A stretch of 64,000 nucleotides of DNA, from contig NIVC01000199.1 of assembly GCA_002269645.1 (NCBI GenBank), positions 1 to 64,000 on the forward strand. The letters are read 5' to 3'. Below the pieces are notes generated by a model. The model was not told the DNA's origin, made no database searches, and saw nothing but the letters and a program-made list of their open reading frames with translations. Positions 5,137 to 51,192 of this stretch are shown piece by piece. How positions within the stretch are numbered: position 1 is the first letter of the stretch; every line of letters begins with the position of its first letter. Source of the DNA: Macrostomum lignano (lineage: Eukaryota). The position numbers were made by a program, and so were the translations under genes.

Positions 5137-8100
5137 ATGTTCTATAGAACAATTTCTATAGTTTACAATTCTATAAAATACAATTACCCCTTACAATTGC
5201 CCCTTACAATTTCTATAGAACTATAGAACCATAGAACCATATGTTCTATATTGTAAGGGGATCATAAAATGAAGAAAGAATGCCAACCCAACTATGTTGG
5301 CCTAGGCCTAGTCATGGTTAATTATAACTAGGCCTGGTATATTTTTTGGGAAATTAGGCCCTATTCTCCTACTAGGCCTTACCTAACCTACTCTAGAATA
5401 AAAACCAAAGTTTGCTTTATAGGCCTATGCTAGAGTGTATTGCTAGGCTAATATAAAACAAAACCATGTAATTTGCATTATTTGTTGTTAAAAATCAATT
5501 GACAATTAGGCTCCATGCAAGCCATAGGCCTAGTCTATGACTCAGGTCTACAAAATTTATCTAGGTTTTCCTATGCTAGAAATTTATGCAGCACAAATGT
5601 GATATATTAACATCTCTGATTAAAAAAAACTAAATATTGAAACAACTAAGCTTATCGAATTAAAAATTTATAACTTAACCTAGCCTTACTTACTATAAAA
5701 ATTTAATGTCTTCAGTTTTTATGTCATAACTGTCATAGGCCTAACATAACATGTCATAACCATAACCGAGTTAAGTTGGAAATTGGAATGGATCGTCCGC
5801 AATAGATCGTCGTTAAGTCGTCGATGACGCAGCTCGAAGAAGCGGACAAACTTTCAAATATCGATAAAAGGGTGGCCAACAGTGTATTAAAACTTTTATA
5901 GGCTTTTTTCCAACAAAAAATGAAGTGTTAAGTTTCAAGATCAGTCTGATCGCATAGTAAAAAGTTCAAAGTTTTGTTTTAGTGTGTTTAAACCCGGAAC
6001 CTGCTGCTTAATTTGTACATTTGTTTAAAGACTAAAAAATGTTTGATAGGGGGCAAGCTATACCAAGCACTACAACCCAAAAGTGGAAAGAAAATAGACC
6101 TGGCATAGTTGCAGGCCAAAAAAGTATGGCCCAATTTTTTTGGCCGCGGCTGAGGGGGAAGGGCATATGGCTCTCCAATTGCCCCCCCCTGGATCCGCGC
6201 CCCTGAATTTTTGCTGGGTGTGCACAGATTAGAAATGGTTAGAGAAAATTAAACAGTCATAATTAGGGTTATTCAATGCAATTAAGTTGCATCTGCTCAA
6301 ACCATGCACTTGCAGGTCTGGGCTGTAGAAGTAGATCGAGAATGGTCGTCGCGAGCGGGATCGAGCTCTTGAAGCGCTCGATCCTCCTCTCCGGCCAGGA
6401 GTTCCCCACCAAACCTAGCGAGCATTGTACATGTACTTTCCGGGGCGTTGTGATGATGGAGAATGATGCCCCGAGCTCGAGTCCTTTTTTGCGACGCCTG
6501 CTGCAGGAGAGAGCGCACAGCAATTTCTGGCAGGATTAATATGTATCGCCATGCGCGCTGCTGCTCTCTCGCCGAAGATTCGATGGTGGGATCCACCAGC
6601 TGGAGAGACTAGGCTGCAACTACTTTAATTTTGTTGTTCTCTGAGTTAACTGAAGATCTAGTAAATATAAAGCTCATTACCGCTGACAATTCCCAGGCTG
6701 AGTTTGACTTGGCCACCATTGAATTTGCTGCGGGTACCACATGTCCACGAGCCTCCTGATCCAGCTCCGGAGTCAACTGATGGGACACTCATTGCGAGCA
6801 GAAATCAATTGCTCAGGTTTAGCCTTGAGTACAGGGGTCACAGTCGCATCGCAACCTCTGTTTCTATTGGGCCACAGTGACTTCAGGCATTTTTCTTACA
6901 AAACCGCGCTATTTCATTCAACAGCGCATTTTGATGCAGACGTAAAAGCAACCCTCAGGCAGCAGTGGTGCAGTACACCATACCTAACATTTTGGGGTCT
7001 ACTCTCTTTAGTAAAAGTTCATGGTTGCCAGCACACACTAGTACGTCGCATGATACTTGCACCAGTAATAATCATGCGTTACACCGCATTCCGACACCCA
7101 GACGCGTCAGAATTAGGAGCGGCAGCACCAAGGGGCCGACCATATTATGCAGCTGCACCTGATCTACACTTGACGTAATTGCTGTAGGTACAATAAATGC
7201 AGGGTGCACAAGGTCACATGCACATGCAAACTGATATGCGCATACATTTTGCGAGCAAAATTAATGCAACAGACTGCTATACATTCATTATATCATGTCA
7301 TGTAAATATAATGTGCATGTAAAACTAAAAGTACATGTCCTGTTTTGACGCCTAAATATATCCGTCGTCTACCGGAAGAAGAAAAATTACTTGTAATTTT
7401 TACATCTAAACTGTACTATATGTCTATACAGTATATCTAATCACAACTAAGGACCACTAGAAGTTACCCTTGTATCAAGACGTAGCGTGCTTAGATGCAC
7501 GCATTGCGGAATTATTTATAGCCGCTTGTTTCAATTGCAGCTGAAGTTCAATGGTACAACGGGTACCTCAAAAGGTATCATCTAGGTACTAACGAGTAGC
7601 AAAAGCTCGAAACATGCCCCTCAAATGGAATGGCGCCTAAAGCCCGCACCCCAAGAAATCAATTTCAAGCTGTGCAAGAATAGTCGAAGAAAACTGCACC
7701 GGAAAGTCGAGGCACCTGCAGGCAAACCTGTCCTGACCTCTACGGTTGAGTAGTTTGTTTTAAAATATTCAAGCAATTTAATGTATGAGATGGTTTACGG
7801 CAAACATCAGAAAATCTCTGAGAAACTATAGACCATATTTGCTTGAGATTTGACAATATTTGCATTTGGCGAACAATCAAGAAGCCTAAAATGATGACGG
7901 CTTGAGCTGGATTTAAGAGTTGCAGTAGGGCGCCAACGGCAGTACTTTAAACTGCTGACTCTCCATTCGACCTGCAGTTACCGCAGGTTTCCTGAGTTTT
8001 TCCATAGTCAGAGAAAATAAGACCGAACTCTGCTATAACAGTATACGTCACCGCTACTCTCTATCTTCTCTGCGTCTTCTCTTCTTTCCACTTAAAAAAC

Positions 8101-8461
8101 AGGCCTCAGTGCTCACTCCGTTTAGCTTGTCCTTTTCTTTAGCATTGGCAGATTAGAACTGATGAAGAGAGAAATTTTCTCACGTGACCATCATAGCTCT
8201 ACTTTTTCAGCCTACAGCCTAGAGCTGAGCTGATGGTGCAGCGGAAAAGATTGGATAGAGAATAAAACGCAGGAGAAGCTTTCATGACGACAGACGCGGT
8301 CAGCTGCACAGCTTTAATTGCCAATCGAAAAGAGCTCACACTCCGACAACTAGTACAATTGAGGGCCAAAAAAAACTTTACAGTAACCATAGTCTACTCG
8401 TAAAACATTGACAGACAAAGCTAGACAAGTTTCCTAATCAGGTCTAATAAGATCAAACGCA

Positions 8462-11400
8462 ATGTCGTCGCCAGTGGAGTCAGCGAAGCGCGATCTGGCT
8501 CGTGCACTTCGCTCCGAGGAGCCTCATCGAGTCAAAGCGATACTTCGGTCGCCAGTTGCCGACCTGGCTTGGCTAGACAAGCCGCTAGACAGGTAACTGC
8601 GGTTAAATGTACATACTACGCACAATCTGTAGAAAACGTTAGGAGCACTGAATATACTGTACCAATACGTCCAATATTTATAAGCTGCAGTACGCACCTC
8701 TAACTTTCAATTCGTTGCAGCTTGAAAGGGGCTGCAGCATTTTCTGGCAGCAGCTTGAAAACCTGCAGGGTTAAGACCATAGACTATAGCTTCTACTGCA
8801 TAATCTGACTGATGTGGTTGCTATGCTATAATGTCTGTGGCCCCAAGGGGCACCAAGGGGCACCAAGGGGCTTTAGCACCAATGGGCTTTAGCACGAATG
8901 GGCTTTAGCACCAAGGGGCTTTAGCACCAAGGGGCTTTAGAACCAATGGGCTTTAGAACCAATGGGCTTTAGTACCAAGGGGCTTTAGCACCAAGGGGCT
9001 TTAGCACCAAGGGGCTTTAGCACCAAGGGGCTTTAGCACCAAGGGGCTTTAGCACCAAGGGGCTTTAGCACCAAGGGGCGCCAGCACCAAGGGGCTTTAG
9101 CACCAAGGGGCGCCAGCACCAAGGGGCGCCAGCACCAAGGGGCTTTAGCACCAAGGGGCGCCAGCACCAAGGGGCTTTAGCACCAAGGGGCTTTAGCACC
9201 AAGGGGCTTTAGCACCAAGGGGCGCCAGCACCAAGGGGCGCCAGCACCAAGGGGCTTTAGCACCAAGGGGCGCCAGCACCAAGGGGCGCCAGCACCAAGG
9301 GGCTTTAGCACCAAGGGGCTTTAGCACCAATGGGCTTTAGCACCAAGGGGCTTTAGCACCAAGGGGCTTTAGCACCAAGGGGCTTTAGCACCAAGGGGCT
9401 TTAGCACCAAGGGGCTTTTGCACCAAGGGCTTTAGCTTTAGCACCAAGGGGCTTTAGCACCAAGGGGCTTTAGCACCAAGGGGCTTTAGCACCAAGGGGC
9501 TTTAGCACCAAGGGGCTTTAGCACCAAGGGGCTTTAGCACCAAGGGGCGCCAGCACCAAGGGGCTTTAGCACCAAGGGGCTTTAGCACCAAGGGGCGCCA
9601 GCACCAAGGGGCTTTAGCACCAAGGGGCGCCAGCACCAAGGGGCGCCAGCACCAAGGGGCTTTAGCACCAAGGGGCTTTAGCACCAAGGGGCTTTAGCAC
9701 CAAGGGGCTTTAGCACCAAGGGGCTTTAGCACCAAGGGGCTTTAGCACCAAGGGGCTTTAGCACCAAGGGGCTTTAGAACCAATGGGCTTTAGTACCAAG
9801 GGGCTTTAGCACCAAGGGGCTTTAGCACCAAGGGGCTTTAGCACCAAGGGGCTTTAGCACCAAGGGGCTTTAGCACCAAGGGGCTTTAGCACCAAGGGGC
9901 TTTAGCACCAAAAGGGGTTTCAGCACCAAGGGGCTTTAGCATCAAGGGGCTTTAGCATCAAGGGGCTTTAGCACCAAGGGGCTTTAGCACCAAGGGGCTT
10001 TAGCACCAAGGGGCTTTAGAACCAATGGGCTATAGCACCAAGGGGCTTTAGCACCAATGGGCTTTAGCACCAAGGGGCTTTAGCACCAAGGGGCTTTAGC
10101 ACCAATGGGCTTTAGCACCAAGGGGCTTTAGCACCAAGGGGCTTTAGCACCAAGGGGCGCCAGCACCAAGGGGCGCCAGCACCAAGGGGCTTTAGCACCA
10201 TGGGGCTTTAGCACCAAAAGGGGTTTCAGCACCAAGGGGCTTTAGCATCAAGGGGCTTTAGCACCAAGGGGCTTTAGCACCAAGGGGCTTTAGAACCAAT
10301 GGGCTATAGCACCAAGGGGCTTTAGCACCAATGGGCTTTAGCACCAAGGGGCTTTAGCACCAAGGGGCTTTAGCACCAATGGGCTTTAGCACCAAGGGGC
10401 TTTAGCACCAAGGGGCTTTAGCACCAAGGGGCTTTAGCACCAAGGGGCTTTAGCACCAAGGGGCTTTAGCACCATGGGGCTTTAGCACCAAAAGGGGTTT
10501 CAGCACCAAGGGGCTTTAGCATCAAGGGGCTTTAGCACCAAGGGGCTTTAGCACCAAGGGGCTTTAGCACCAAGGGGCTTTAGCACCAAGGGGCTTTAGC
10601 ACCATGGGGCTTTAGCACCAAAAGGGGTTTCAGCACCAAGGGGCTTTAGCATCAAGGGGCTTTAGCACCAAGGGGCTTTAGTACCAAGGGGCTTTAGCAC
10701 CAATGGGCTTTAGCACGAATGGGCTTTAGCAACAAGGGGCGCCAGCACCAAGGGGCGCCAGCACCAAGGGGCGCCAGCACCAAGGGGCTTTAGCACCAAG
10801 GGGCTTTAGCACCAAGGGGCTTTAGCACCAAGGGGCGCCAGCACCAAGGGGCGCCAGCACCAAGGGGCGCCAGCACCAAGGGGCGCCAGCACCAAGGGGC
10901 GCCAGCACCAAGGGGCGCCAGCACCAAGGGGCGCCAGCACCAAGGGGCGCCAGCACCAAGGGGCGCCAGCAGCAAGGGGCGCCAGCACCAAGGGGCGCCA
11001 GCAGCAAGGGGCGCCAGCACCAAGGGGCGCCAGCACCAAGGGGCGCCAGCACCAAGGGGCGCCAGCACCAAGGGGCGCCAGCACCAAGGGGCGCCAGCAC
11101 CAAGGGGCGCCAGCACCAAGGGGCGCCAGCACCAAGGGGCGCCAGCACCAAGGGGCGCCAGCACCAAGGGGCGCCAGCACCAAGGGGCGCCAGCACCAAG
11201 GGGCGCCAGCACCAAGGGGCGCCAGCACTAAGAGGCGCCAGCACCAAGGGGCGCCAGCACCAAGGGGCGCCAGCACAAGGGGCGCCAGCACAAGGGGCGC
11301 CAGCACCAAGGGGCGCCAGCCGCTTTATTTAGTTTAACCCCTTCTTACTCTGGTTCTCTTAGTTCGGAATGTACGACTAAACGGATGCATATTGCAATTT

Positions 11401-14083
11401 AACGTTTTCACAACAGAGACGGCAGCTGCGCTCTGCACATCGGCTCCTATTGCGGCCAGGAGGTTGGCGTTCACGCCTTGCTAGAATTCGGCTGCGACCC
11501 GAACGTCACCAATCAGAACGGAGAGACTCCGCTGCACGTGGCAGCCGAGCAGCGGTTCGAGCACATGATCGACCTGCTGGTCGATGCCGAGGGAATCCGG
11601 CTTGATGCGGCTCGAAAGCTGGACAGGCGGACTGCGCTGCACATTGCCGCCAGTCACGGCTGTTGCGACGGCGTGCGAAGACTTCTGGAAGCCGGAGCTG
11701 GCATCGATGTTCGGGATCGGGACGGCAACACACCGGTGTTCCTGGCTGTCCAGAACAACAAGTGAGGATTTAGTTTACCTGATGGGTAGCTACGCTTTGC
11801 ACTTAAGTAGAAGGACGCACCAAAACAAGAGACATCTTGACAACAATTTCCCGCAGACACCGCGTAGTTCACGAGCTGGTCTCTCAGGGCGCTAATTTGA
11901 AGCTGAAGAACAACGGCTTGCAGACTTGCTTGGCATTTGCCATGAAGCAGAGCCAGGATAAAGCCATGATCAAACTGCTTGTTGAGCGCAAGTCCACCAT
12001 GGCTCCTCAGCCTGGCACTAGCAGGCAGGCAGCCGTTCGAGCTACCCGAATTGACAATGCTGCACAGAAGCAACAGTCGATGGCAGGTAGAGATCTGCCT
12101 AATCAGGGTAGATTTTTTATGACCGAGTCGCATAGTAACAAACCTGACCGGCCGAATCTCACACCCAGCAGACAGCTATGGCAGCAACACCCTCAGGTAT
12201 GGCAGTTTCTAACCGATTGTATAAATCGGTTCTGTAGTAGGTTTCGATGAGCTTAATTTATTCACTAGCTAAAGGGGGTTGTGGTAGCCCTGTGGTTTGA
12301 GCGTCGCCTGCGTCGGAGTCCCGACTTGAAAGGTTGGGGGTTCGATTCTCGACCCACTCGGAACAGTTTGTGTCCTTGAGCAAGACACTTAACTCTGCAT
12401 TGCTTCAGTTTACCCAGCTGTAAAATGGGTGCCAGCATTAGCTGGGGTAATTGAGGGTGTGTGTGGCGACCCCCCCCCCAGTCCTTGGACTGAACGCTCA
12501 ATATCTGGGGCTGAGCTGTCGGTTGCACATCTGCCCATTATTAATATTATTATGACTATCAAATCTCATAGCCGCAGACTCGACATCAACAATCGGTCAT
12601 TCCGGAAGAGCCAACAAAGCATCCTCAAGCAGCCCAGCACCCTCAGTACCACCAGCAGAAGCAGCAACAGCAGCAACAACAGCAGCACAGGCTTAGCAAC
12701 GCAAATTACTCGCGCCAACGCGACACGAAAAGCGCCGGTGTTCAAGCAACCCCGGCCGAATCAGACAAAGAAGATGATGATGAAGAGGATGCATACAGCA
12801 TGGACAGCAAAATCCGCGGCTTGTGCATCATCGTGAACAATCAGGATTACTTCAACTCCGACGATTTCAAAGAACGCGCCGGAACAGATCTGGACGAGAG
12901 GCGCTTGGAGCGACTATTTAAATCGTTGCGCTTTCACGTCAAGATATTCAAGAATCTGGACGCCAAGGATATCTACTGGAACCTCAGCAACTATGCCAAG
13001 AGCGATCACAGCGGGTATGACTGTTACGTCTGCTGCATCCTGTCTCACGGCACTCTCGGCGGGATCTACGGAGTTGATGGACGAGTGCAGAAACTGTCCG
13101 ACCTCACCGTGATGCTCAGCAGCACCAATTGTCCGTCGTTGGCCGGCAAGCCAAAACTGTTCTTTATCCAGGTGAGTTTCACAGCTGTACTGGTCTCGGC
13201 AATCCTCTACTTTCGCACGTTTAATTATTTTTCGAAAATAATGACTTGCCCTTAATTACCGCGAGTAAATATTTGAACTCGCGCGAGTGTACGACGTGGT
13301 AGTGTATCGATTTTATGTCTATGTATACTAGTTTGAGGCGGCTATTGGCTATGTCTATGGCCAAAACCTGAAATTGCTCTCTGTTCAAGTTTTGGCCTTA
13401 GACAATCGCTCCCTGTTTCTTGAGCAGCAATGGGCCCATGCTAAGGCCCGGTTCAGGGCTATGCATGGCACATCTAAGGCCCTGTTCGACACCCACCTAG
13501 ATGAGTTTCTGTGGCGCCGTTGCCACCCGCGCAACACCTTCGGCAAAATACTTTTCTGGGTGGTGCACTACTACGATGTTTAGTGCAACCGAACGTGGTA
13601 GCAAACTCGCTCATACCTGAGATGAGTCTCAAAGTCTTGAAGTTGACCGCCTGAACTTCGAAACCCATGCATCTTTAGGCTTGTCGAGGCCGCTGTCTCC
13701 AGCGAGGCGCGCACCATTTCACCGGCGGTCGGCAAGCCAGCGATCGCGACCCGGCCATGATCCCGATGGCCAACCACGAGACGGACGCGCTGTCAGCCGA
13801 CCCAGACCAAGAGTACATCCTGCCTGATCACGGCGACTTCTTGATTGGCTACGCCACGGTGGCTCAGCACATCGCCCAGCGGCACCGGGAGCAGGGCTCC
13901 GTGTACGTGCAGACCCTCTGCGACGTTATCGAACGCGGCAGGCACAAGGAGGACCTGCTCAGTCTGCTCACCAAAGTCAAATACCGCGTGTCGAAGCACG
14001 TGTTCCACAATGAAGACGGCAGTGTGTTCGTTCAGATGCCCGAAGTAAAGGAAACTCTGCGCAAGAAGATCTACTTTAAGTAG
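8462..14083 (+). CDS. Ankyrin-repeat-containing caspase, ~606 aa. Exons 8462-8592, 11417-11761, 11857-12196, 12572-13171, 13679-14083
   Basis: About 4 ankyrin repeats (DGSCALHIGS, NGETPLHVAA, DRRTALHIAA, DGNTPVFLAV), a Q-rich/acidic linker, then caspase p20 (RGLCIIVNN, YDCYVCCILSHG, KPKLFFIQ|ACRG) and p10 (DFLIGYAT, GSVYVQTLC, QMPEVKETLRKKIYF). All introns GT-AG and in phase; spliced length 1821 nt = 607 codons. Confidence 0.9.
8845..11320. repeat. 16-bp minisatellite (gcaccaaggggcttta / gcaccaaggggcgcca)n filling intron 1 of the ankyrin-caspase
   Basis: About 2.5 kb of tandem copies; source of the spurious LAPLGAGAPWCWRPLV ORFs. Confidence 0.97.
12274..12555 (+). mobile_element. tRNA-derived CORE-type SINE, copy 1 (caspase intron 3)
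   Basis: A-box-like tggtttgagcg and B-box ggttcgattc. Segment gtgtccttgagcaagacacttaactc...cagtttacccagctgtaaaatggg resembles the MIR CORE consensus. (tta)n-like tail. Confidence 0.75.
13374..13590 (+). mobile_element. Merlin/ISXO2 (IS1016-like) transposase C-terminal remnant in caspase intron 4
   Basis: WAHAKARFRAMHGTS...FDTHLDEFLWRR resembles the ISXO2-like transposase C-terminus; no DDE core present. Confidence 0.65.
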
Positions 14084-14632
14084 CAACTTAAGCACTTCAT
14101 TTAAAATCTGCTCAACAATTAATAGTCTAGTATACCTTTCAAAATTTCCCAATAATAGCATAGCAAAAGCCTAAACAATTCTTGACAATGAAAGCTATCC
14201 TAGAAACAAAAATTGCCCCGTTAAACTTCTGCAACATTTACGGACCCTTTTGAGGGTGATATCCATGTACAATACAAGCTACTTACAATCAGCTATGTGG
14301 AGCAATAATGAGTAGAAATCGCTATTACATAACGGCTATATGTACATGTATTATATGCATGTATAGACAAAGCTAGCTAAACTGTCTCAGTTCATGTACT
14401 TTTAAAGGACTTATCTAATTCGGTAATGTCAGACTATAAGGGTGTAAAATAAAAACGCACTTCTATCCCAATTTTTATATATTATTCTTCGACTTTTTAG
14501 AGGTTCTCAATAAAAATCCTATGTCTCGGTTGCAGAGAGCATCCATAAGTATTTATTAAAGTAGAATATTGTTTCATCTGGCTGCTATGCCGTTGCGTCA
14601 TTACCAATTTGCTCAGTTTCAGTCACATGTAT

Positions 14633-16782: not shown

Positions 16783-18747
16783 GATTGCGTTGCTAGAAAT
16801 TTGGTCAGCGAGTTTTCTACAAAACTGACAAGTCTGGGGCTGAATAAAACTGTCCCCTGGCTTAAGATGTCTTTTATAGACGATGGTCGGGATTTTCACC
16901 AGCCAATCAGAAATTGTCAATGAATTCATCAACGCTTGAAACGTTCAAAGGTTATAAGAGATTAAGGCAAGATGGGAGAAACTCTAAATAAAAAACCAAG
17001 AAATTTCGGGAAATCCTGAAGAACCTGAGTGATCGGGTGGGGTGTTTCATAGATGTTACAATTAGTGACCAGTGATAGTGACAAGCGATAATTTATGAGG
17101 TTACAAGTGCTGCAGAGTTTCGTTTCACAGAATGATTTGCAAATCTAGCGACAAGGTACAAGCTCTCTGAGTAGTGACTCAAAATATGTCTATGGCCAAA
17201 TCAACGGGTGCCTCGCTCGAACCCCCCATCTCGAAAGCTTGCTTAAGATCTATGGTAAGATCTGTCTTACGCAGTCGTCCCGTGTATAGCATAAGATTAA
17301 TCGAAGGGCGTTTCTGAAAGTCATCTTTGTCGCAGCTTTTGTGATTGACAGGTGCTTCTGAATTCCTTGCAGAAGTTGCTCCTTCTTAAGGGTGAAGAAA
17401 TTCCGCACACGCTTGACCATTCTTAGTAAATCCGTGTGTAAAAATGTAACAAGTCCGTACCAAGGCGCAAGTTTACGATCTCACATAAAAAGAGCCAGAA
17501 ACATACGAAGCTATAGTTTCGAGAAACAGCTTCCTCGCATAAGTTTACGCGGTCGTAGATTTGCGCCAAATCTTACGTACGGCCCAGTTGCGAGAACTTT
17601 GATCGCAACGCCTACGCATGACCGACCCAGCTTACGTCTATTGCCAGCGCGTAAGTTGCTTTCGAGAAAGACCCCCAGGACCCTGAATATGCTCTGAAAA
17701 GTGCTCTATGAAACACTCTGTGAAGCACAACAAATCTCTGCACTCTGATCGGGGGTGCCATGCAGACTCCTCGCCTTTCACCAAAGCTCCGACACTCTTG
17801 AATCAGTGTGATACCGATACCGGAATTTTCGGGAAATGAAAAACCTAATGATTATCACAGAGAAAGCGCGGCTTGCAAATTCCGGTTGACCCCCACTGAG
17901 CTCCTGGCTCTGGAAAACTTCAGAGAATGAGCTGAGACACGGCTTCAGTGTTCAGCGGTCACTGTACCAGTGGACTTCATAGTTTCAAGCTTCAACGTAG
18001 CTATACATAGATAGTCAATCCAATCTATTTATAACCATTTTTACCGAATCTTTTCTTCAATCTTCACGTCGATATCCTAGTCTTTTAGTCAGAAATAGTC
18101 GCAAGTCTGCACAAAAACACCTGTAACCAACTGCTTGATTCGTATTCCGTAGACAACGGTGCATATAACTATAGGCCCACGCATACATTTTTATCTCAAC
18201 AAAACACCTGCGAAATCCCTCCTTTACCAGCGAGCCCGCATCAATTTTTATCCAGAGAGAGAGTAATTACCGTGGGCGTCAATTTTCAGCAATTTTCTGT
18301 TGCTTTATTTGCTTCCTCAGTGTCGGGATGTGGGTGACAGCCATTTTTTCACCTAAGCCGCCTCACAATAATGGCCACCCACGGCTTACAGTTTTTCGAC
18401 GCTGAAATCAGTAGGAACAGCCTTTCTAGATTCTTAATTTCGTATGACAAGCTGCTGCTGCTGTAACTTGCTGTAAAAACTAGCACACAAACCTTCCAGA
18501 AGCGCGCTGCAACTTAATTTTATAACCGAACTTTAATTATTCTGTCTTATACTGAATCTCAGCAACTTGCTGTCATATTGGACTTGCGGTATCTTATCTA
18601 CTGTATCATGACTGCAGCTCATATCCATACCGAACCAGTTGTGGGAGCGAATGTTCGTACATACGAGCATATAAGTACCCGAGATTTTGTACAGCCAAAG
18701 GTATGTCTACATTCTGCAACCTGTCTCGCCGTTTGAAAAAGAAAAAA

Positions 18748-20663
18748 ATGGTGAATTTCTGCAACGCATTTCCGTTGCTTATAGCGCTGAGCTGGCATTG
18801 TCGTTCCTGTGCTCTGGGTCAGAAGCTTATCGTGGAAACGGATGACGCAATCTACCGTGGTCGGGTGCTGTCTCTAAACACCCAACAGCCTCAACAGCAA
18901 ACTGTTGCCTTCCTGGGCATTCCATACGCTCAGCCGCCGATCAATGAGCTTCGATTCGCAGCCCCGTTGCCATGGAGACCATCAATTCCCGAAAGAAACT
19001 CGTCGGTCAAAGCCGAGCTAAACGCCACCAGAGCGGGACCGGCCTGCCTGCAGCGATCAGACCAGAGTGGCACCCCTAGCCGCATGTCTGAGGACTGCCT
19101 GTACCTGAATGTACACTCGCCTCCTGGAGTTCAAGGACGTCCTAAACCGGTGCTGGTCTGGCTGCACGGCGGGTTCTTTGAAACCGGTTCAGTCAGCGAC
19201 CCGGACCAGACTGGCACCTGCTTCAGTTGGGATCTGGTAGCAACGTGCCAGAGCATGCTGCTAGTTGAGGCCGCCTACCGGCTGGGAGTGTTTGGCTTCC
19301 TAGCCGAGCCGGAGCCCGCCAACGGCAATGCCGGCCTGAAGGACCAGCAGATGGCGCTGGCCTGGGTTGCTAAAAACATCGTCCACTTTGGCGGTAACAA
19401 TCGCTCAGTGACTCTGGCAGGCCTTGACGCTGGAGCTGCAGCCGTCGGATTTCACATGCTGAGTCCCGGCAGCAGGGACCACTTCCAGAGAGCCGTCTTC
19501 CTTGGCGGCAGCCCCCTTGCAGGCTGGGCTTTCGTTCGAGATCTTCAAGCGCTGCGCACGGCACACGAAGCCTTCTACAGTCTGACAGGCTGCACAGACC
19601 ATGACGAGCTGCTGAATTGCTTGCGCGCTCTTCCAGCGGACGAATTGAACTCTCACCAATCAAAGTTTAATCAGGTATTTGATCGAGTCGAGTTTCCAGT
19701 GATTGTTGATAGCCAGTTTCTACAGTCGGATCCTGTCGAGGCTTTTGAGCGGGGCAATTTCGAGTCAAAAGCAGTCATCATTGGCGTAACCAGTTTGGAA
19801 GGAATTCAGCTAGCCTACAGAGCCCTCGGGGCGTTCAACGTCACGAACCAGTGGAATTTGACCGGCCAAGTTCACTTGGATTTGCTTGCTGAAGCCTTTC
19901 GCTACGTACCCCGTTTTCCAGAGGAGCCGGCGCCTCTGGCCAGCGAGTTTCTGCAGCTGACATTAACTTCCTATCCGGGCGAAAACTTGGGCGCTCGAAA
20001 TTTCCGGCTGCTGACGAGCGCTCTATCGGAGCAGGCGGTGGTGTGCGACTCAAACCGGATGGCCGACCTTCTGCTCCAAGCTGCCAACGGGAGTTCGGAC
20101 ACATTTTTTTACCAACTCGACGAGCCTGATAGCAACACAGATGAGTACCTGGGCGCCGGGCATGGCAAAGACGCCGCCTACTTCACCGGCGAACCACTGC
20201 GACGAGCTGACTATGATACAGAGCAGAAATAATTGTCTAATTCAATGATGGCCATACTGAAAACATTTCTAGACAGTGGGAACGTCACCGTGACTGGTTG
20301 GAAGCCGACCAGTCAACAGGGACTGGAGTTTTACAGATTCAGAGCGGCAAGAAGCGCCGATTACCGCTCGGAGATGGTCAGTGGCGGATTTAAGCGACAG
20401 GACTGCCGCCTGTGGTCTGAAGTCATGCCTCGGCTGAGTGTTGCAACGCCGACTACTTCAGCTGAACCGGACGTTGACACCGAGGCAAAGTTCTGGGAGC
20501 GCTGCAACACAACGATAAACTTGGTGAGCGTCATTGTCAGGGCGTCGGCGGAGGTCTGATCCTGCTTCTGATCGTCTGCGTTGTCATTGTGGCCAGAGAT
20601 CGTTACAGTAGTTCGCACGATTTCATTGAGCTTCATCAGCGTGTCAAACCATTGGGAAAATAG
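18748..20663 (+). CDS. Intronless type-B carboxylesterase/cholinesterase-like protein, predicted non-catalytic and probably type-I membrane. Interrupted by an in-frame TAA (20230-20232) and a 1-nt frameshift near 20495
   Basis: FLGIPYAQPP, SEDCLYLNV, WLHGGFFETGS, YRLGVFGFL, NAGLKDQQMALAWV...FGG. The nucleophile elbow reads GLDAG instead of GxSxG. The frame continues after TAA (LSNSMMAILKTF). The shifted frame gives GVGGGLILLLIVCVVIVA (TM-like) plus a short tail. An upstream in-frame ATG exists at 18703. Confidence 0.8.
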
Positions 20664-20831: not shown

Positions 20832-21145
20832 GCTGCAGCCTAGTGGTTAGAGCGTTGTACTCACGACCTAAAAAGGTCGAGGGTTTGATTCCCGATCCCA
20901 CTAGGAACAATTTGTGTCCTTGAGCAAGACACAACTCTGCATTGCTTCAGTTCACCCAGCTGTAAACTGCTATAGCATTGGGTGCTAGCATTAGCTGAGG
21001 TAATTGAGGGTGTGTCTGGCGACCCCCCCCCAGCCCTTGGACTGAACAGCCGTACGCAGCCTTCAGATGCGCCGCGCAATAGCTGCGGCTGAGCTGATGA
21101 ATGCACATCTGTCCAATGAGCCAGGTGTAATCAAATATTATTATT
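20832..21145 (+). mobile_element. tRNA-derived CORE-type SINE, copy 2
   Basis: Clearly homologous to 12274-12555 (gtgtccttgagcaagacac, gcattagctg.ggtaattgagggtgtgt.tggcgacccccccc). Confidence 0.75.
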
Positions 21146-47199: not shown

Positions 47200-50100
47200 A
47201 TGCCGCGAGCAGGACTTCCCACAGAGAGCCACGGATGGGGTTCTGACGACTCGTCCGATGGAGGGAGCAGCCGGCGGTCCAAGAGGGGTGGCACCTCTTT
47301 GGGTGGCGCGGCTCTGGATGAGGAGATCGAGCTCACCCGACGACGCATTGAACTGCTAAGGCTGCAGAAAGAAGAGGCAGAGCTGCGACGGTCGGTGGAC
47401 AAGGCACCAGATAATCGCGGTAAGCTACGAGAATTTTTTAGCCAGTCTGCTTGCGCTGAGTCTGATAGGTGGTCCAATGATGGTGAGCTTGATGCTGCCA
47501 ATTTTGCTCCAAGCAACGCTAGAGTTTCATCTGGGCGGCTGCTCCGTATTTGCGACTTCATTGATGCCCCTGGCCAGGCTGATGAGCTTCTTTCGCAGGG
47601 TGAGACAGCAAAGCAGAATCTCAAGAGCGTTAGACCGAAATCTGTAGACTCCGTGACAGTCGGCCAATGGATTTCTGCCAATGCTAAAATCATGTATGCC
47701 ATGCTGCAATCCGGACAGCTAGCGTCTCATGACACCGATAGTGAGCCAAAAAGTCTCTTGGACTACTTGCAGCACGTTATCCACATCGGCGATCTGCTTG
47801 ATGGGGGGTACGACTGGCAAGTCCTTCTTCGTTATGATGACGACCTGCGTAAGTTCCAGCATGCACACGGCTCCAAGTGGTCCCAGCCGCCTTTGTCTCT
47901 GATCTGTAAGCACCTGACGCGTGACGGCCCCAAAGAACCTTCATAGTCGGCAAGCCAGCCAGACTGGCCGCGGTGACCGCCGACAATTCGCTTCGCGAGG
48001 CCAAGCGGTCTGTGGACTGTTTAACAGCTCCACTGGATGTCAGAGACACCTGCAACTATCTGCACTGCTGTCGGATCTGTGGTGGCTCACATGCTGCTGC
48101 TAGCCACACCAACCGTGCTAATCAAGCAAAAAACTGAAAGAAGCGCCGCATGCGGATCCCATGCCTGCCTGCCTCCGACGTCGCTCAACCTGCCTGCCTG
48201 CCTGCCTCCGACGTCGCTCAACCTGCCTGCCTGCCTGCCTCCGACGTCGCTCAACCTGCCTGCCTGCCTGCCTCCGACGTCGCTCAACCTGCCTGCCTGC
48301 CTGCCTCCGACGTCGCTCAACCTGCCTGCCTGCCTGCCTCCGACGTCGCTCAACCTGCCTGCCTGCCTGCCTCCGACGTCGCTCAACCTGCCTGCCTGCC
48401 TGCTTCCGACGTCGCTCAACCTGCCTGCCTGCCTGCCTCCGACATCGCGCAACCTGCCTGCTTGCCTGCCTCCGACGCTGCCAAACCTGCCTGCTTGTCC
48501 GCCTCCATAATCGATCCTGCCTGCCGGCTAGCAAACGGCTGTCCTCCGGTCGATCCTCGTCGGAGCGGTGACCTCGTCGTGGCTGCTTGGGAGGAGCGTC
48601 TTCGTGGAGATCCGGACGAGAATTTCCTTGTCGACAGTCTTCGTGCTGGTTTTTCTTTAATCGACGACGGTTCTAAAGTGCCCGCCTTTGAGTCTGATAA
48701 CTACCCGTCGGTGGAGGAGTTCAGACAGGAGGTCGAATGCCTGCTGCTTGAGGAAATTCGCAGGGGTAGAGTCGTGGTGGTTCCGGATCCGCCTAGCTTG
48801 GTGAGCCCGCTTGGGGCTATTCGCCAATCATCTGGTGGCGTCAGACTCATTCACGACTGCTCCGTCCCCCATAATGCGTCCCTCAACGACTGTTTCACCG
48901 CCGACCGCAAGCTTCGTTTTGCATCTGTCGAGGATTTCGTGCGTCTTCTTCGGCCAGGTCACTTCATGGCCAAAGTTGATATTGCTTCGGCGTATCGGTC
49001 CATCGCCTGCCACCCCAGCTGCTGGCCTCTTCTTGGTCTGAAGTTTAAGTTTTCCGGCGACGATCACGATACTTACATGGAAGACCGACGCCTTCCCATG
49101 GGTTCTGCCGGCTCTGTTCCTAGCTTTCACCGTGTCTCTCAAGCCATTCGTCGCTTCATGGTCAAGGACGGCTATACCGCTGTAGTTAACTATCTGGATG
49201 ACTTTGCTGTCACTGCCGCTACCTACAGAGATTGCTTCAAGGCCTATGACCACCTGCTAAGTCTTCTGGAGCACCTTGGCTTCGAGGTCAACCGTAAAAA
49301 GTGCACCCCGCCTTGTCAGGACATTGTCTTCCTCGGTATCCAGACAGACATCGGAGTCATGTCTCTGCCTCCGGAAAAGCTGCAGGAGCTGCGTCAGTTG
49401 CTCACTGATTGTCTTGCCGCTAGACAAGTCTCTGCTTCTTTCTTGCGTCGCCTCACCGGAAAGTTGAGCTGGTTTTGTCAGGTGCAGAGACAAATTCGCA
49501 TGTTCCTTCGCCCCATCATCGAGTTTACCGAGAAGCTTAGTCGTGAAAATCGTCGAGTGCGCATTTGCGAGAGTTTGCGGCATCTTTTACAATTGTGGGA
49601 ATCGGCCGTCAGGTGTTATCACGATCGTCTTATCTGGCCCATCTTCTCCGATGCTTTGGCCGTGGAAACTGACGCCTGCATCAGTGGCGGCGCTGCAATT
49701 CTCAGCAGTTGCTGCTTCCGCGATTGGTTTTTCGTTTATTTTTCCTCGGACTTGGATGGCCGTTTGGCCGATCTGCACATCAATTACAAGGAGGCGGCTA
49801 TCGCTCCTCTCACTCTGCTGCGGTTTCGTGACCAGCTTCATCAGGCCCAGGTGGTTTTCTACAGCGACAACCAAGCAGCTGTCGGCATGTTCAACCGGGG
49901 CTCTGCTAAGTGTCCTATCGTGAATGATCTTCTGATGCAGGCTGGGCTTGTCTGCATGCAGCAGCAGATCACTTTCAAGGTCTTTTACATGCCCGGTTGC
50001 CGCCAGTTCCTCGCTGACCCCGCCTCTCGTCTCCTGACGGGAGACGCTGCTCTGATTGATTTTGCCTCTCGTTTCTACGGTCATTTGTTGATTGATCCCT

Positions 50101-51192
50101 CTGAATTTGCTTCGCATGCGCTGGGTCCTGCTTCCGCTTCCACCCTGTTTTTCAGGTGCCGCCTCCTTTGGGCTGCCAACCGAGCTGCTCCCTCTAGTTC
50201 GCGCCGCCTTCGCACCGGCGTCGCTGCGGTCGCTGGAAAGCAAATGGAGGATGTGGAGCGCTTTCTGCAGCGAGTCAAAGATCAACGCTCTGAAGCCGAC
50301 TCCGACTCAGATTTGCCAGTTCATCAACTTCCTCATGCACCATCGCTTGTCGCGGCAATCGAGCCTGCAGGCATACGTCAGCTCGATCGCCACTCTGTTG
50401 CGACTCAGCGACTCTCCGGTTACGACAGACTCTGGACTCGTGCGCTTGGCTCTTCGAGGTGCGAAGCGGCTGCTGGCCGCAACGCCCACTTGCCGCAAGG
50501 CTGCGGTGGGGCCGAGTCATCTTCTGCGACTGCGGCGCTGCCTGCAGCTGCAGACCGGCATTGGAGCTTCTCTGTGGAGCCTCATCTTAGCCGGCTGGTG
50601 GGCGATGCTGCGGGCGGCCAATCTCTGCTCTGTCAGCCGGGCAAACGTCGGCACGGCGGTGCTGATCAGCGATCTTCGCCTGGGCGTCAAGGAGGCTCGG
50701 ATTTCTGTTCGCCTATCCAAGACGAATCAATTCGGCGAGCACCGTCATGTCGTTCTTCTGCCCTGCATCTGCAAGAGTGCGACTGCTCCGCTGTGTCCGC
50801 TTTGTGCGCTCCATCATCATTTCAGCCGGAACTCTCTAGACATTGCCCCTCTTTCGCAGCCTCTGTTCTCTACCCTGCAGTCAGCAGGAAGCTGGATGAG
50901 CTTAACTGCAGCGCATGTCCGGCGCGAGTTGTCCCAGCTTTTTTACCAGGCTGGCCTTCCAAGAGACCGCTTTTCAATGCACAGCCTGCGCCGAGGCGGC
51001 GCCAGCTTTGCCAGGCGTTCAGGCATCGCGAGCGAGGATATCAAAGCCATTGGCGACTGGAAGAGCGATGCGGTTCATCTCTATGCGGGCCGGCAGCCGC
51101 AGGTGGCCAGCCGTACTGTTCGTCGCATCGGGCGGCGGTTCAGGCTGCGTTCTAACTGTTTAGCTGTTGAACTGTGTCTGTGGGGGCGTTAG
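47200..51192 (+). mobile_element. Tyrosine-recombinase retrotransposon (DIRS order, Ngaro-like). gag-like ORF1 47200-~48137 (frameshifted), RT-RNase H ORF 48150-51155, YR ORF 50092-51192
   Basis: RT: FMAKVDIASAY, LPMG, NYLDDF, FLG. RNase H: ETDAC, INYKEA, YSDNQAAV, ADPASR. YR: LRAANL, SKTNQFG, HSLRRGGA, GDWKSDAVHLY. ORF1 C-terminal C..FN...C...C.Y.H.C..C...H zinc finger. Overlapping ORFs, no methyltransferase domain. Confidence 0.92.
48165..48500 (+). repeat. 33-bp in-frame minisatellite at the start of the retroelement RT ORF (ACLPASDVAQP x ~10)
   Basis: cctgcctgcctccgacgtcgctcaacctgcctg repeats. Confidence 0.95.

What the first reader, a model, noticed from the sequence alone, without database searches (positions are those of the whole stretch)
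8462..14083. Caspase whose prodomain is an ankyrin-repeat array instead of CARD/DED
Seen: a clean five-exon, in-phase gene joining about 4 ankyrin repeats, a polyQ/acidic linker and a complete caspase with intact catalytic His (LSHG) and Cys (QACRG, split by intron 4). Exon 1 (8462-8592) is absent from the ORF track and is separated from exon 2 by a 2.8-kb intron largely filled by minisatellite. Established: initiator caspases normally use death-fold prodomains (CARD or DED). The YDCYVCCILSHG block and the intersubunit HETD|A site resemble caspase-8-type enzymes (VETD|S). Inference: an initiator-like protease recruited through ankyrin interactions, i.e. a non-death-fold activation route for cell death or immune signalling. 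I cannot confirm novelty without a search.
Basis: partly seen in the sequence, partly recalled or inferred. Interest (0 to 1): 0.85.

Follow-up and report, generated by a model that had tools for sequence, protein, structure and literature searches.

The report
Flatworm caspase with ankyrin-repeat prodomain
This is a real, intact gene of the free-living flatworm Macrostomum lignano for a caspase-8-like protease whose recruitment domain is an ankyrin-repeat array; this "ANK caspase" type is already published for parasitic flatworms, so the only new point is that it also occurs in a non-parasite.

Summary
Five exons with canonical GT..AG junctions give a 606-aa protein: an ankyrin array (aa 1-205), a disordered Q-rich/acidic linker, and a complete caspase domain with His431, Cys474 and the Asp-pocket residues. 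The window is Macrostomum lignano. GenBank already holds four near-identical copies of this gene, annotated from RNA-seq assemblies.

The claim of novelty does not hold. "ANK caspases" were noted in Schistosoma in 2014. A 2024 Genome Biol Evol paper described them as a flatworm clade sister to DED caspases and proposed the same ankyrin-recruitment idea. No functional work was found.

That paper calls ANK caspases restricted to parasitic flatworms and reports none in M. lignano. My analyses place this gene with the parasite ANK caspases:
- it is the best non-parasite match to a parasite-only profile (238 vs 200.7 bits);
- a neighbour-joining clade has 77.5% bootstrap support;
- the six-unit ankyrin arrays are collinear;
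- one phase-2 intron sits at the same codon in Macrostomum, Echinococcus and Schistosoma.

Ankyrin sequence similarity alone is no better than generic.

Verdict: a new member of a known kind, which probably pushes the origin of the family to before parasitism. Interest is modest.

The parts
8462..8592 (+). Exon 1 (aa 1-44, ends in phase 2): start codon and the N-terminal capping helix pair of the ankyrin array
   Evidence: One search gives the junctions. (AF2) shows helices 4-17 and 21-28 at pLDDT about 75-83. One search shows it aligning with the N-termini of cestode and schistosome ANK caspases (AKRDLARALRSEEP vs LRRELLLALESKDP). One search shows 0 differences in 131 nt against the paralog.
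8860..11314 (.). 16-bp minisatellite (GCACCAAGGGGCTTTA, 152.8 copies) filling 87% of intron 1 (8593-11416)
   Evidence: TRF. The same repeat sits at the same place in the paralogous locus L001 but is only about 680 bp long there.
11417..11761 (+). Exon 2 (aa 44-159): ankyrin repeats 1-3 and the first helix of repeat 4. It ends in phase 2 inside codon K159.
   Evidence: The intron position and phase are shared with Echinococcus (N238) and Schistosoma japonicum (L216).
11857..12196 (+). Exon 3 (aa 159-272): rest of ankyrin repeat 4, the C-cap (to aa 205, nt 11995), and the first half of the disordered linker
12572..13171 (+). Exon 4 (aa 273-472). It holds the Q-rich and acidic linker (polyQ 12656-12687; DDDEED|A just before p20) and the large-subunit part of the caspase domain, with Arg374 and His431 (13046-13048). 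It ends after Gln472. An alternative in-frame acceptor lies at 12578.
   Evidence: The GenBank copies use 12578.
13679..14083 (+). Exon 5 (aa 473-606 plus stop). It holds ACRG with catalytic Cys474 (13682-13684), the intersubunit linker with HETD508|A (13775-13786), the small subunit with Arg540, and the stop codon at 14081-14083.
13727..13741 (+). 15-nt in-frame insertion (GRQAS) in the intersubunit linker, absent from all four annotated M. lignano copies

Best explanation
The locus is one copy of the Macrostomum lignano gene family Mlig019067. It is closest to copy g3 (PAA88208).

The product is an 'ANK caspase': a caspase-8-clade procaspase in which the tandem death-effector domains are replaced by a six-unit ankyrin solenoid. 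About 140 disordered Q-rich/acidic residues tether that solenoid to the protease.

Shown here. The gene is real and intact, evolves under constraint, and lies in one reading frame. The protease has the full catalytic and Asp-binding set (Arg374, His431, Gln472, Cys474, Arg540). There are Asp sites where caspases are normally processed: DEED345|A before p20 and HETD508|A between the subunits. The caspase domain groups with the ANK caspases of parasitic flatworms.

Inferred. It behaves as an initiator. The monomeric zymogen is concentrated by binding of the ankyrin groove to an unidentified oligomeric partner. It dimerises by induced proximity, cuts its own linker, and then activates executioner caspases. 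This would substitute for the FADD/DED route that flatworms are reported to lack.

Evolutionary corollary. The ANK caspase arose before the parasitic Neodermata, at or before the common ancestor of Macrostomorpha and Neodermata. It is therefore not an adaptation to parasitism.
For: Gene and protein:
- Gene model and domains.
- Identity with M. lignano proteins PAA94436, PAA70133, PAA88208 and PAA50311.
- Those GenBank models derive from RNA-seq-based, boundary-trimmed transcript assemblies (PMC5730564). This is indirect RNA support for one mRNA.
- Constraint: exons differ at 0.44% of sites and introns at 2.5% against the paralog L001, p = 4e-7.
- Catalytic and S1 residues align to human caspase-8.
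- AF2 gives six confident helix pairs at aa 1-205, and disordered segments at 208-345 and 474-539.

Family placement:
- A caspase profile built only from parasite ANK caspases scores M. lignano at 238 bits, directly after all parasite sequences. The best non-flatworm caspase scores 200.7 bits.
- In a neighbour-joining tree of 130 caspase domains, M. lignano plus the parasite ANK caspases form a clade with 77.5% support in 200 bootstraps.
- The full-length alignment is collinear: N-cap, four repeats, C-cap, linker, caspase.
- A phase-2 intron lies in the same aligned codon of ankyrin repeat 4 in M. lignano (K159), E. granulosus (N238) and S. japonicum (L216). T. regenti has a matching acceptor.
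- The published tree places an M. lignano caspase as sister to the ANK caspases and puts ANK caspases sister to DED caspases. The same paper reports loss of FADD and DED caspases in platyhelminths, with DED caspases kept only in the two free-living planarians it sampled (PMC11463336).
Against: No experiment on any ANK caspase was found, so the initiator role, the induced-proximity activation and the partner are all inferred.

The ankyrin region of M. lignano matches a parasite-prodomain profile no better than generic bacterial and animal ankyrin proteins do (best stretch 32 bits vs up to 49). Prodomain orthology therefore rests on collinearity and one shared intron.

Tree support is moderate and comes from a distance method only. 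Under a broad DED-caspase profile the M. lignano domain scores 270 bits, which looks like a generic caspase-8-type domain.

ANK+caspase also occurs in a jellyfish protein (P0370) and, per the paper, in one annelid. The fusion can therefore arise more than once.

The linker cleavage motif is not conserved in the parasite proteins.

No RNA reads were inspected directly.
Confidence: 0.6

Rival explanations
1. Convergent fusion. Macrostomum joined an ankyrin array to a caspase-8-type protease independently of the parasitic flatworms. On this reading the gene resembles an ANK caspase but is not an orthologue, and the family is still parasite-specific.
For: Ankyrin-region similarity to parasite prodomains is not above the generic ANK level. 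ANK+caspase proteins exist in a jellyfish (P0370) and in an annelid (PMC11463336), so the fusion recurs. The clade bootstrap is only 77.5% with a distance method. The two planarians sampled by that paper lack the architecture. Only one of the introns is shared.
Against: Among about 490 caspases, including the best 150 cluster representatives from 1.84 billion proteins, the M. lignano domain is the closest non-parasite relative of the parasite clade. Unit number and order are the same in the array. The identical intron position and phase in ankyrin repeat 4 across three lineages would be roughly a 1% coincidence if intron sites were uniform, and it is not a periodic per-repeat intron.
Confidence: 0.2
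2. The gene is the same, but the ankyrin array has a different job. It may act as an intramolecular brake that docks on the protease until released. Or it may be a substrate or localisation module for a non-apoptotic (for example immune or differentiation) protease, as fly Dredd acts on ankyrin-bearing Relish.
For: Designed ankyrin proteins inhibit caspases, and Caiap's ANK domain binds the catalytic domain of caspase-1 (cited in PMC11463336; PMC5662874). A long flexible tether (aa 208-345) would allow docking in cis. An Asp-rich site (DDDEED|A) could release the array. The Dredd/Relish analogy comes from my own knowledge.
Against: Nothing in the sequence separates this from the recruitment model. 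The AF2 model was too shallow (pTM 0.39) to show any ANK-caspase contact. Placement next to DED initiator caspases favours a recruitment prodomain.
Confidence: 0.17
3. Annotation artefact. An ankyrin gene and a separate short-prodomain caspase gene are merely adjacent, and the in-frame joins are fortuitous.
For: An older database entry is caspase-only and starts at Met349 (MDSKIRG..., P0242). If intron 3 were retained, the frame would stop at 12250 and yield an ANK-only product. No RNA reads were examined here.
Against: Four in-phase canonical junctions are present. Four GenBank copies built from RNA-seq transcript assemblies, with experimentally cut gene boundaries, all join ANK and caspase. 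The same fused architecture is conserved in trematodes, cestodes and a monogenean. The linker exons are as constrained as the rest of the coding sequence.
Confidence: 0.03

Closest known systems
ANK caspases of parasitic flatworms (Schistosoma, Echinococcus, Taenia, Hymenolepis, Cichlidogyrus); Lee et al. 2014; Genome Biol Evol 2024, PMC11463336
   Same: Both have an N-terminal ankyrin prodomain with the same unit order, a long low-complexity linker and a C-terminal QACRG caspase. The NCPSLAGKPKLFFIQACRG block is identical. Caspase domains are 41-45% identical. One intron is shared in ankyrin repeat 4. They group together in the tree and in the profile ranking.
   Different: The host is a free-living, early-branching flatworm, whereas the family was published as restricted to parasites. 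The protein is shorter (606 vs 706-808 aa), its ankyrin repeats are near-consensus and lack the parasite insertions, and its intersubunit linker is much shorter. Its caspase domain is far less diverged from caspase-8. The other intron positions differ.
Caspase-8 / DED caspases (vertebrate CASP8/10, mollusc and brachiopod caspase-8)
   Same: Caspase-8 is the best solved-structure match (E 8e-50, 36-40% identity). The same catalytic and S1 residues are present. A linker Asp site aligns with LEMD384|L. The long prodomain marks it as an initiator type.
   Different: There is no death-effector domain (no PF01335 hit), so recruitment by FADD-type DED filaments is not expected.
[quoted passage not shown]
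   Same: An ankyrin array takes part in assembling or stabilising an active caspase complex.
   Different: Caiap is an adaptor with no protease domain, and its ankyrins bind caspase-1 in trans. Here the ankyrins and the protease are one polypeptide, and no sequence relationship beyond generic ANK was seen.
Other unusual-prodomain caspases: the jellyfish Sanderia malayensis [ANK-caspase]x2 model (P0370), the annelid Alitta virens ANK caspase, and the M. lignano 'protein kinase-like prodomain' caspase of PMC11463336
   Same: All are caspases that swapped the death-fold prodomain for another interaction module. P0370 has ANK directly upstream of each caspase unit.
   Different: P0370 does not group with support with the flatworm clade (2.5% bootstrap) and has almost no linker. 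The window's protein and its annotated copies show no kinase-like hit even at E = 10, so it is not the kinase-prodomain caspase reported for M. lignano.

Membership tests
Caspases (peptidase family C14A) | Full-length match to the caspase domain profile above the curated threshold | tested here: met
   Peptidase_C14 scores 186.4 bits against a cut-off of 21.4, covers profile positions 1-233 of 233, and spans aa 354-604.
Caspases (peptidase family C14A) | Catalytic His-Cys dyad in the SHG and QACxG motifs | tested here: met
   LSHG (His431) and QACRG (Cys474) align to the caspase-8 active site.
Caspases (peptidase family C14A) | Asp-binding S1 pocket (Arg179/Gln283/Arg341 in caspase-1 numbering) | tested here: met
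   Arg374 (KERAGT), Gln472 and Arg540 (AQRHREQGS) align with RDRNGT, Q and SYRNPAEGT of caspase-8.
Caspases (peptidase family C14A) | Cleaves after aspartate; activated by dimerisation and/or linker cleavage | not testable with these tools
   This needs recombinant enzyme assays.
ANK caspases (PMC11463336) | Ankyrin-repeat prodomain N-terminal to p20/p10 in one polypeptide | tested here: met
   Pfam Ank families are found at aa 50-200. AF2 shows six helix pairs at aa 1-205. The reading frame is single and spliced, and GenBank holds RNA-based models.
ANK caspases (PMC11463336) | Caspase domain belongs to the monophyletic ANK-caspase clade next to DED caspases | tested here: met
   With a parasite-only profile M. 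lignano scores 238 bits and the best outsider 200.7. The NJ clade has 77.5% bootstrap support. Support is moderate, and no ML or Bayesian tree was run.
ANK caspases (PMC11463336) | Prodomain homologous to that of the parasite proteins, not merely another ankyrin array | tested here: inconclusive
   The profile score is no better than for generic ANK proteins. Unit order is collinear, and a phase-2 intron is shared in repeat 4 in three lineages.
ANK caspases (PMC11463336) | Restricted to parasitic platyhelminths (stated as a property of the clade by its authors) | tested here: not met
   The host is Macrostomum lignano, Macrostomorpha, outside Neodermata; its free-living habit is stated in the papers listed. 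This contradicts the stated distribution rather than the architecture.
DED caspases (caspase-8/10) | Tandem death-effector domains in the prodomain | tested here: not met
   There is no PF01335 hit at E <= 0.01 in the window protein or at E <= 10 in two annotated copies, while the vertebrate and mollusc relatives in the same searches all carry it.
CARD caspases (caspase-2/9, Dronc, CED-3) | CARD prodomain | tested here: not met
   There is no PF00619 hit.

The most novel reading that the evidence does not exclude
The ANK caspase is not a parasite invention. It was already present in the common ancestor of Macrostomorpha and Neodermata, and the planarians sampled so far, which keep a DED caspase instead, lost it. 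That would overturn the published link between this caspase type and the origin of parasitism. It would also hand the problem of finding the unknown ankyrin-binding activation platform to M. lignano, a transgenic, RNAi-amenable, free-living model, rather than to hard-to-manipulate parasites.
Probability: 0.6. Interest if true: 0.5.

Novelty: new member of a known kind. Interest (0 to 1): 0.35.

Why it matters
ANK caspases are reported as the only long-prodomain caspases other than caspase-2 in parasitic flatworms, which include major human and livestock pathogens. They have been proposed as a lineage-specific cell-death route. Nobody has shown how they are activated.

An orthologue in a free-living laboratory flatworm has two consequences. 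First, it corrects the evolutionary account: the family would be older than parasitism and so not an adaptation to it. Second, it offers a tractable system for finding the ankyrin-binding partner and testing whether this is a death-fold-independent initiator pathway.

For the scan itself, the finding is mostly a rediscovery of an annotated gene and a published architecture.

Tried and rejected
Steps that led nowhere:
- Direct RNA evidence. The exact 606-aa and 604-aa products are not in the protein collection, and the P0001 cluster holds only GenBank, UniRef and MetaClust entries with no transcript contigs. RNA support is therefore indirect, through the annotation method.
- Caspase-domain-only and profile searches of the word-indexed database. 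Bird and fish caspase-8/9 swamped them and they added no free-living flatworm sequences.
- Prodomain-profile test for specific ankyrin homology: inconclusive.
- Pairwise BLAST of the prodomains: only generic ANK-level similarity (E 4e-7).
- Schistosoma loci. The S. rodhaini locus is not on record. The full exon chain of the S. japonicum model could not be reproduced with canonical sites, so only the two relevant junctions were solved.
- No kinase gene could be recognised among the window's ORFs upstream of the gene, and the two upstream ORFs scanned (1637-2143, 6741-7178) had no Pfam hit. No kinase-like hit was found in two annotated copies even at E = 10. The window's gene is therefore not a mis-read copy of the published M. 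lignano 'kinase-prodomain' caspase.
- No tRNA and no Rfam family was found in or near the gene.
- Searches for functional studies of ANK caspases and for the gene ID found nothing.

Considered and rejected: two adjacent genes fused by mistake (see the rivals).

Not done:
- Fold search of the AF2 model was skipped because its mean pLDDT was 57.9 and the domain identities were already unambiguous.
- Whether M. lignano also has a DED caspase or FADD could not be checked, because no M. lignano proteome or genome search was available.
Full report
**What is in the sequence**

Reading 8000-14600 and joining the proposed exons gives a clean model. The exons are 8462-8592, 11417-11761, 11857-12196, 12572-13171 and 13679-14083 on the + strand. 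Every intron is GT..AG. Together they give 1821 nt, or 606 codons plus a stop.

Pfam finds ankyrin families over about aa 50-200 and a complete caspase domain at aa 354-604 (E 8.2e-55). Against solved structures, the ankyrin part matches ankyrins. The protease part matches caspase-8 best (E 8e-50). Effector caspases and caspase-9 follow at about 1e-39 to 1e-38.

The alignment to human caspase-8 shows all functional residues: Arg374, His431 (LSHG), Gln472, Cys474 (QACRG) and Arg540. HETD508|A lies at the position of the second caspase-8 linker site, LEMD|L. An acidic DDDEED345|A sits just before the large subunit.

A shallow AlphaFold2 model (mean pLDDT 57.9) is confident only for the ankyrin part (pLDDT about 75-85). 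That part has six helix pairs: an N-terminal cap encoded by exon 1, four repeats and a C-cap. Residues 208-345 (20% Gln) and the intersubunit linker 474-539 are disordered.

Intron 1 is 2824 nt, and 2455 nt of it is a 16-bp minisatellite. There are six units rather than about four. An alternative acceptor lies 6 nt downstream. HETD aligns with the second, not the first, caspase-8 linker site.

**Where it comes from, and whether the gene is real**

The protein is 98-99% identical over its full length to four GenBank proteins of Macrostomum lignano: BOX15_Mlig019067 g1-g4, with accessions PAA94436, PAA70133, PAA88208 and PAA50311. UniRef names them 'Caspase-8'.

The window's product equals g3 except for two things. 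It has two extra residues from the upstream acceptor. It also has a 15-nt in-frame insertion (GRQAS, 13727-13741) in the linker.

Those GenBank models come from a genome-guided RNA-seq transcript assembly. Its gene boundaries were cut using trans-splicing and poly(A) evidence (PMC5730564). The ANK-caspase join therefore has indirect RNA support. I could not inspect reads directly.

The g1 locus (L001) is a paralogous or duplicated copy. It has the same minisatellite, shorter, in intron 1, and the same carboxylesterase gene downstream. Between the two loci, coding exons differ at 8 of 1800 aligned sites (5 synonymous, 3 not). Introns differ at 34 of 1337 sites and also carry many indels (p = 4e-7). 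The coding sequence, including exon 1 and the ankyrin exons, is under constraint.

**What is already known**

A 2024 paper (Genome Biol Evol 16:evae204, PMC11463336) describes 'ANK caspases'. [quoted passage not shown] According to that paper they were first seen in Schistosoma (Lee et al. 2014, Trends Parasitol 30:75). The authors suggest they are initiators that use an unidentified ankyrin-binding activator, in animals that have lost FADD and DED caspases.

My searches independently show the architecture in schistosomes, Trichobilharzia, Echinococcus, Taenia, Hymenolepis, Anoplocephala and the monogenean Cichlidogyrus. I found no biochemical or genetic study of any ANK caspase.

**What is not in the literature**

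[quoted passage not shown] It links their origin to 'the establishment of parasitism'. [quoted passage not shown]

The window's gene and its annotated copies are unambiguous ANK+caspase proteins. Two annotated copies scanned at E = 10 show no kinase-like signal. M. lignano belongs to Macrostomorpha, outside Neodermata, and is free-living (papers listed).

**Is it an orthologue of the parasite ANK caspases?**

Evidence for:
- A caspase profile built from parasite sequences alone ranks the M. lignano copies directly after all parasite sequences (238 bits). The best other caspase, a bird caspase-8, scores 200.7. The set held about 490 caspases, including the best 150 cluster representatives from a search of 1.84 billion proteins.
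- A neighbour-joining tree of 130 caspase domains (245 columns) recovers M. lignano plus the parasite ANK caspases with 77.5% support in 200 bootstraps.
- The full-length alignment is collinear unit by unit, including the exon-1 cap helix.
- M. lignano intron 2 splits codon K159 in phase 2 (VFLAVQNN[K]HRVV). The same aligned codon is split in phase 2 in Echinococcus granulosus (LHWAVKTN[N]YAMA) and Schistosoma japonicum (LHCAVMNK[L]YNIV). Trichobilharzia has a matching acceptor. It is not a periodic per-repeat intron, because the other ankyrin intron of the parasite genes lies at a different repeat position.

Evidence against:
- The M. lignano ankyrin region is near-consensus. It matches a parasite-prodomain profile no better than unrelated ankyrin proteins do.
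- The tree is distance-based with moderate support.
- Under a broad DED-caspase profile the domain looks like an ordinary caspase-8-type domain.
- ANK+caspase also occurs in a jellyfish model (Sanderia, two tandem ANK-caspase units) and reportedly in one annelid. Independent fusion is therefore possible.

I put orthology at about 0.6-0.7.

**How it most likely works**

Shown: the protein is a catalytically complete, Asp-specific-type protease of the caspase-8 lineage. It has a long prodomain built as a protein-binding solenoid on a flexible tether, and Asp sites at both usual processing positions.

Inferred: like other long-prodomain caspases, it is a latent monomer. It is activated when the prodomain concentrates it on an oligomeric partner. 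It then processes its own linker and cleaves executioner caspases.

Other readings cannot be excluded from sequence. The ankyrins might dock on the protease as a brake. They might target substrates in a non-death pathway. Caiap shows that ankyrin arrays can bind and stabilise an active caspase.

**Verdict**

The novelty claim fails.

What remains is a new member of a known kind. It probably extends the ANK caspase family to a free-living, early-branching flatworm and so contradicts the published parasite-specific distribution. That is a useful correction and a practical opening for experiments, but not a new kind of system.

Noticed in passing
window 8860-11314 (intron 1); L001 about 8400-9070: A 16-bp minisatellite (GCACCAAGGGGCTTTA, with blocks of a GCGCCA variant) has 153 copies here. 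The same site in the paralogous locus holds only about 680 bp. This is a length-polymorphic intronic array between gene copies.
   Followed up: partly
window 12572 vs 12578: Two tandem in-frame acceptors lie 6 nt apart (tcatag|CCGCAG|ACT). All GenBank copies use the downstream one, which removes Pro-Gln from the linker. This may be an alternative-splice pair.
   Followed up: partly
window 13727-13741: A 15-nt in-frame insertion (GGTCGGCAAGCCAGC, GRQAS) sits in the intersubunit linker. It is absent from all four annotated M. lignano copies and from L001.
   Followed up: yes
window 12329-12495 (intron 3) and 20872-21047: A tRNA-like, SINE-like element (contains ggttcgattctcgaccc) occurs in intron 3, with a second copy at 85% identity 8 kb downstream. 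ARAGORN and Rfam call nothing there.
   Followed up: partly
window 13374-13583 (+), inside intron 4: A 69-aa ORF (…FDTHLDEFLWRRCHPRNTFGKILFWV…) looks, from memory, like the C-terminal remnant of a transposase. It has no Pfam hit.
   Followed up: partly
window 18703-20232 (+): An intronless 509-aa carboxylesterase ORF (COesterase, E 3e-90) lies downstream of the caspase gene. A carboxylesterase gene also lies downstream of the caspase paralog in L001, so the duplicated block keeps its gene order.
   Followed up: partly
window 48150-51192 (+): A 1001-aa ORF carries a reverse-transcriptase domain (RVT_1) after a repetitive N-terminus, and it overlaps a 366-aa ORF. This is a retroelement, possibly of the tyrosine-recombinase type (not tested).
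   Followed up: no
window 25.1-25.6, 27.4-29.7, 31.9-32.2, 37.9-41.2, 41.8-42.7 and 44.4-45.0 kb: Several long micro- and minisatellite arrays translate as spurious ORFs of up to 532 aa on both strands. They are a trap for ORF-based gene calling in this genome.
   Followed up: no
P0370 (Sanderia malayensis, EukProt): A jellyfish protein model of 1127 aa consists of two tandem [ankyrin repeats - caspase] units. The ANK-caspase architecture therefore also exists in a cnidarian. It does not group with support with the flatworm clade.
   Followed up: partly
PMC11463336 vs GenBank PAA94436/PAA70133/PAA88208/PAA50311: The published survey of lophotrochozoan caspases lists no ANK caspase for M. lignano, although four annotated ANK+caspase proteins are in GenBank. 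Its 'kinase-prodomain' M. lignano caspase, placed sister to ANK caspases, could not be identified here.
   Followed up: partly
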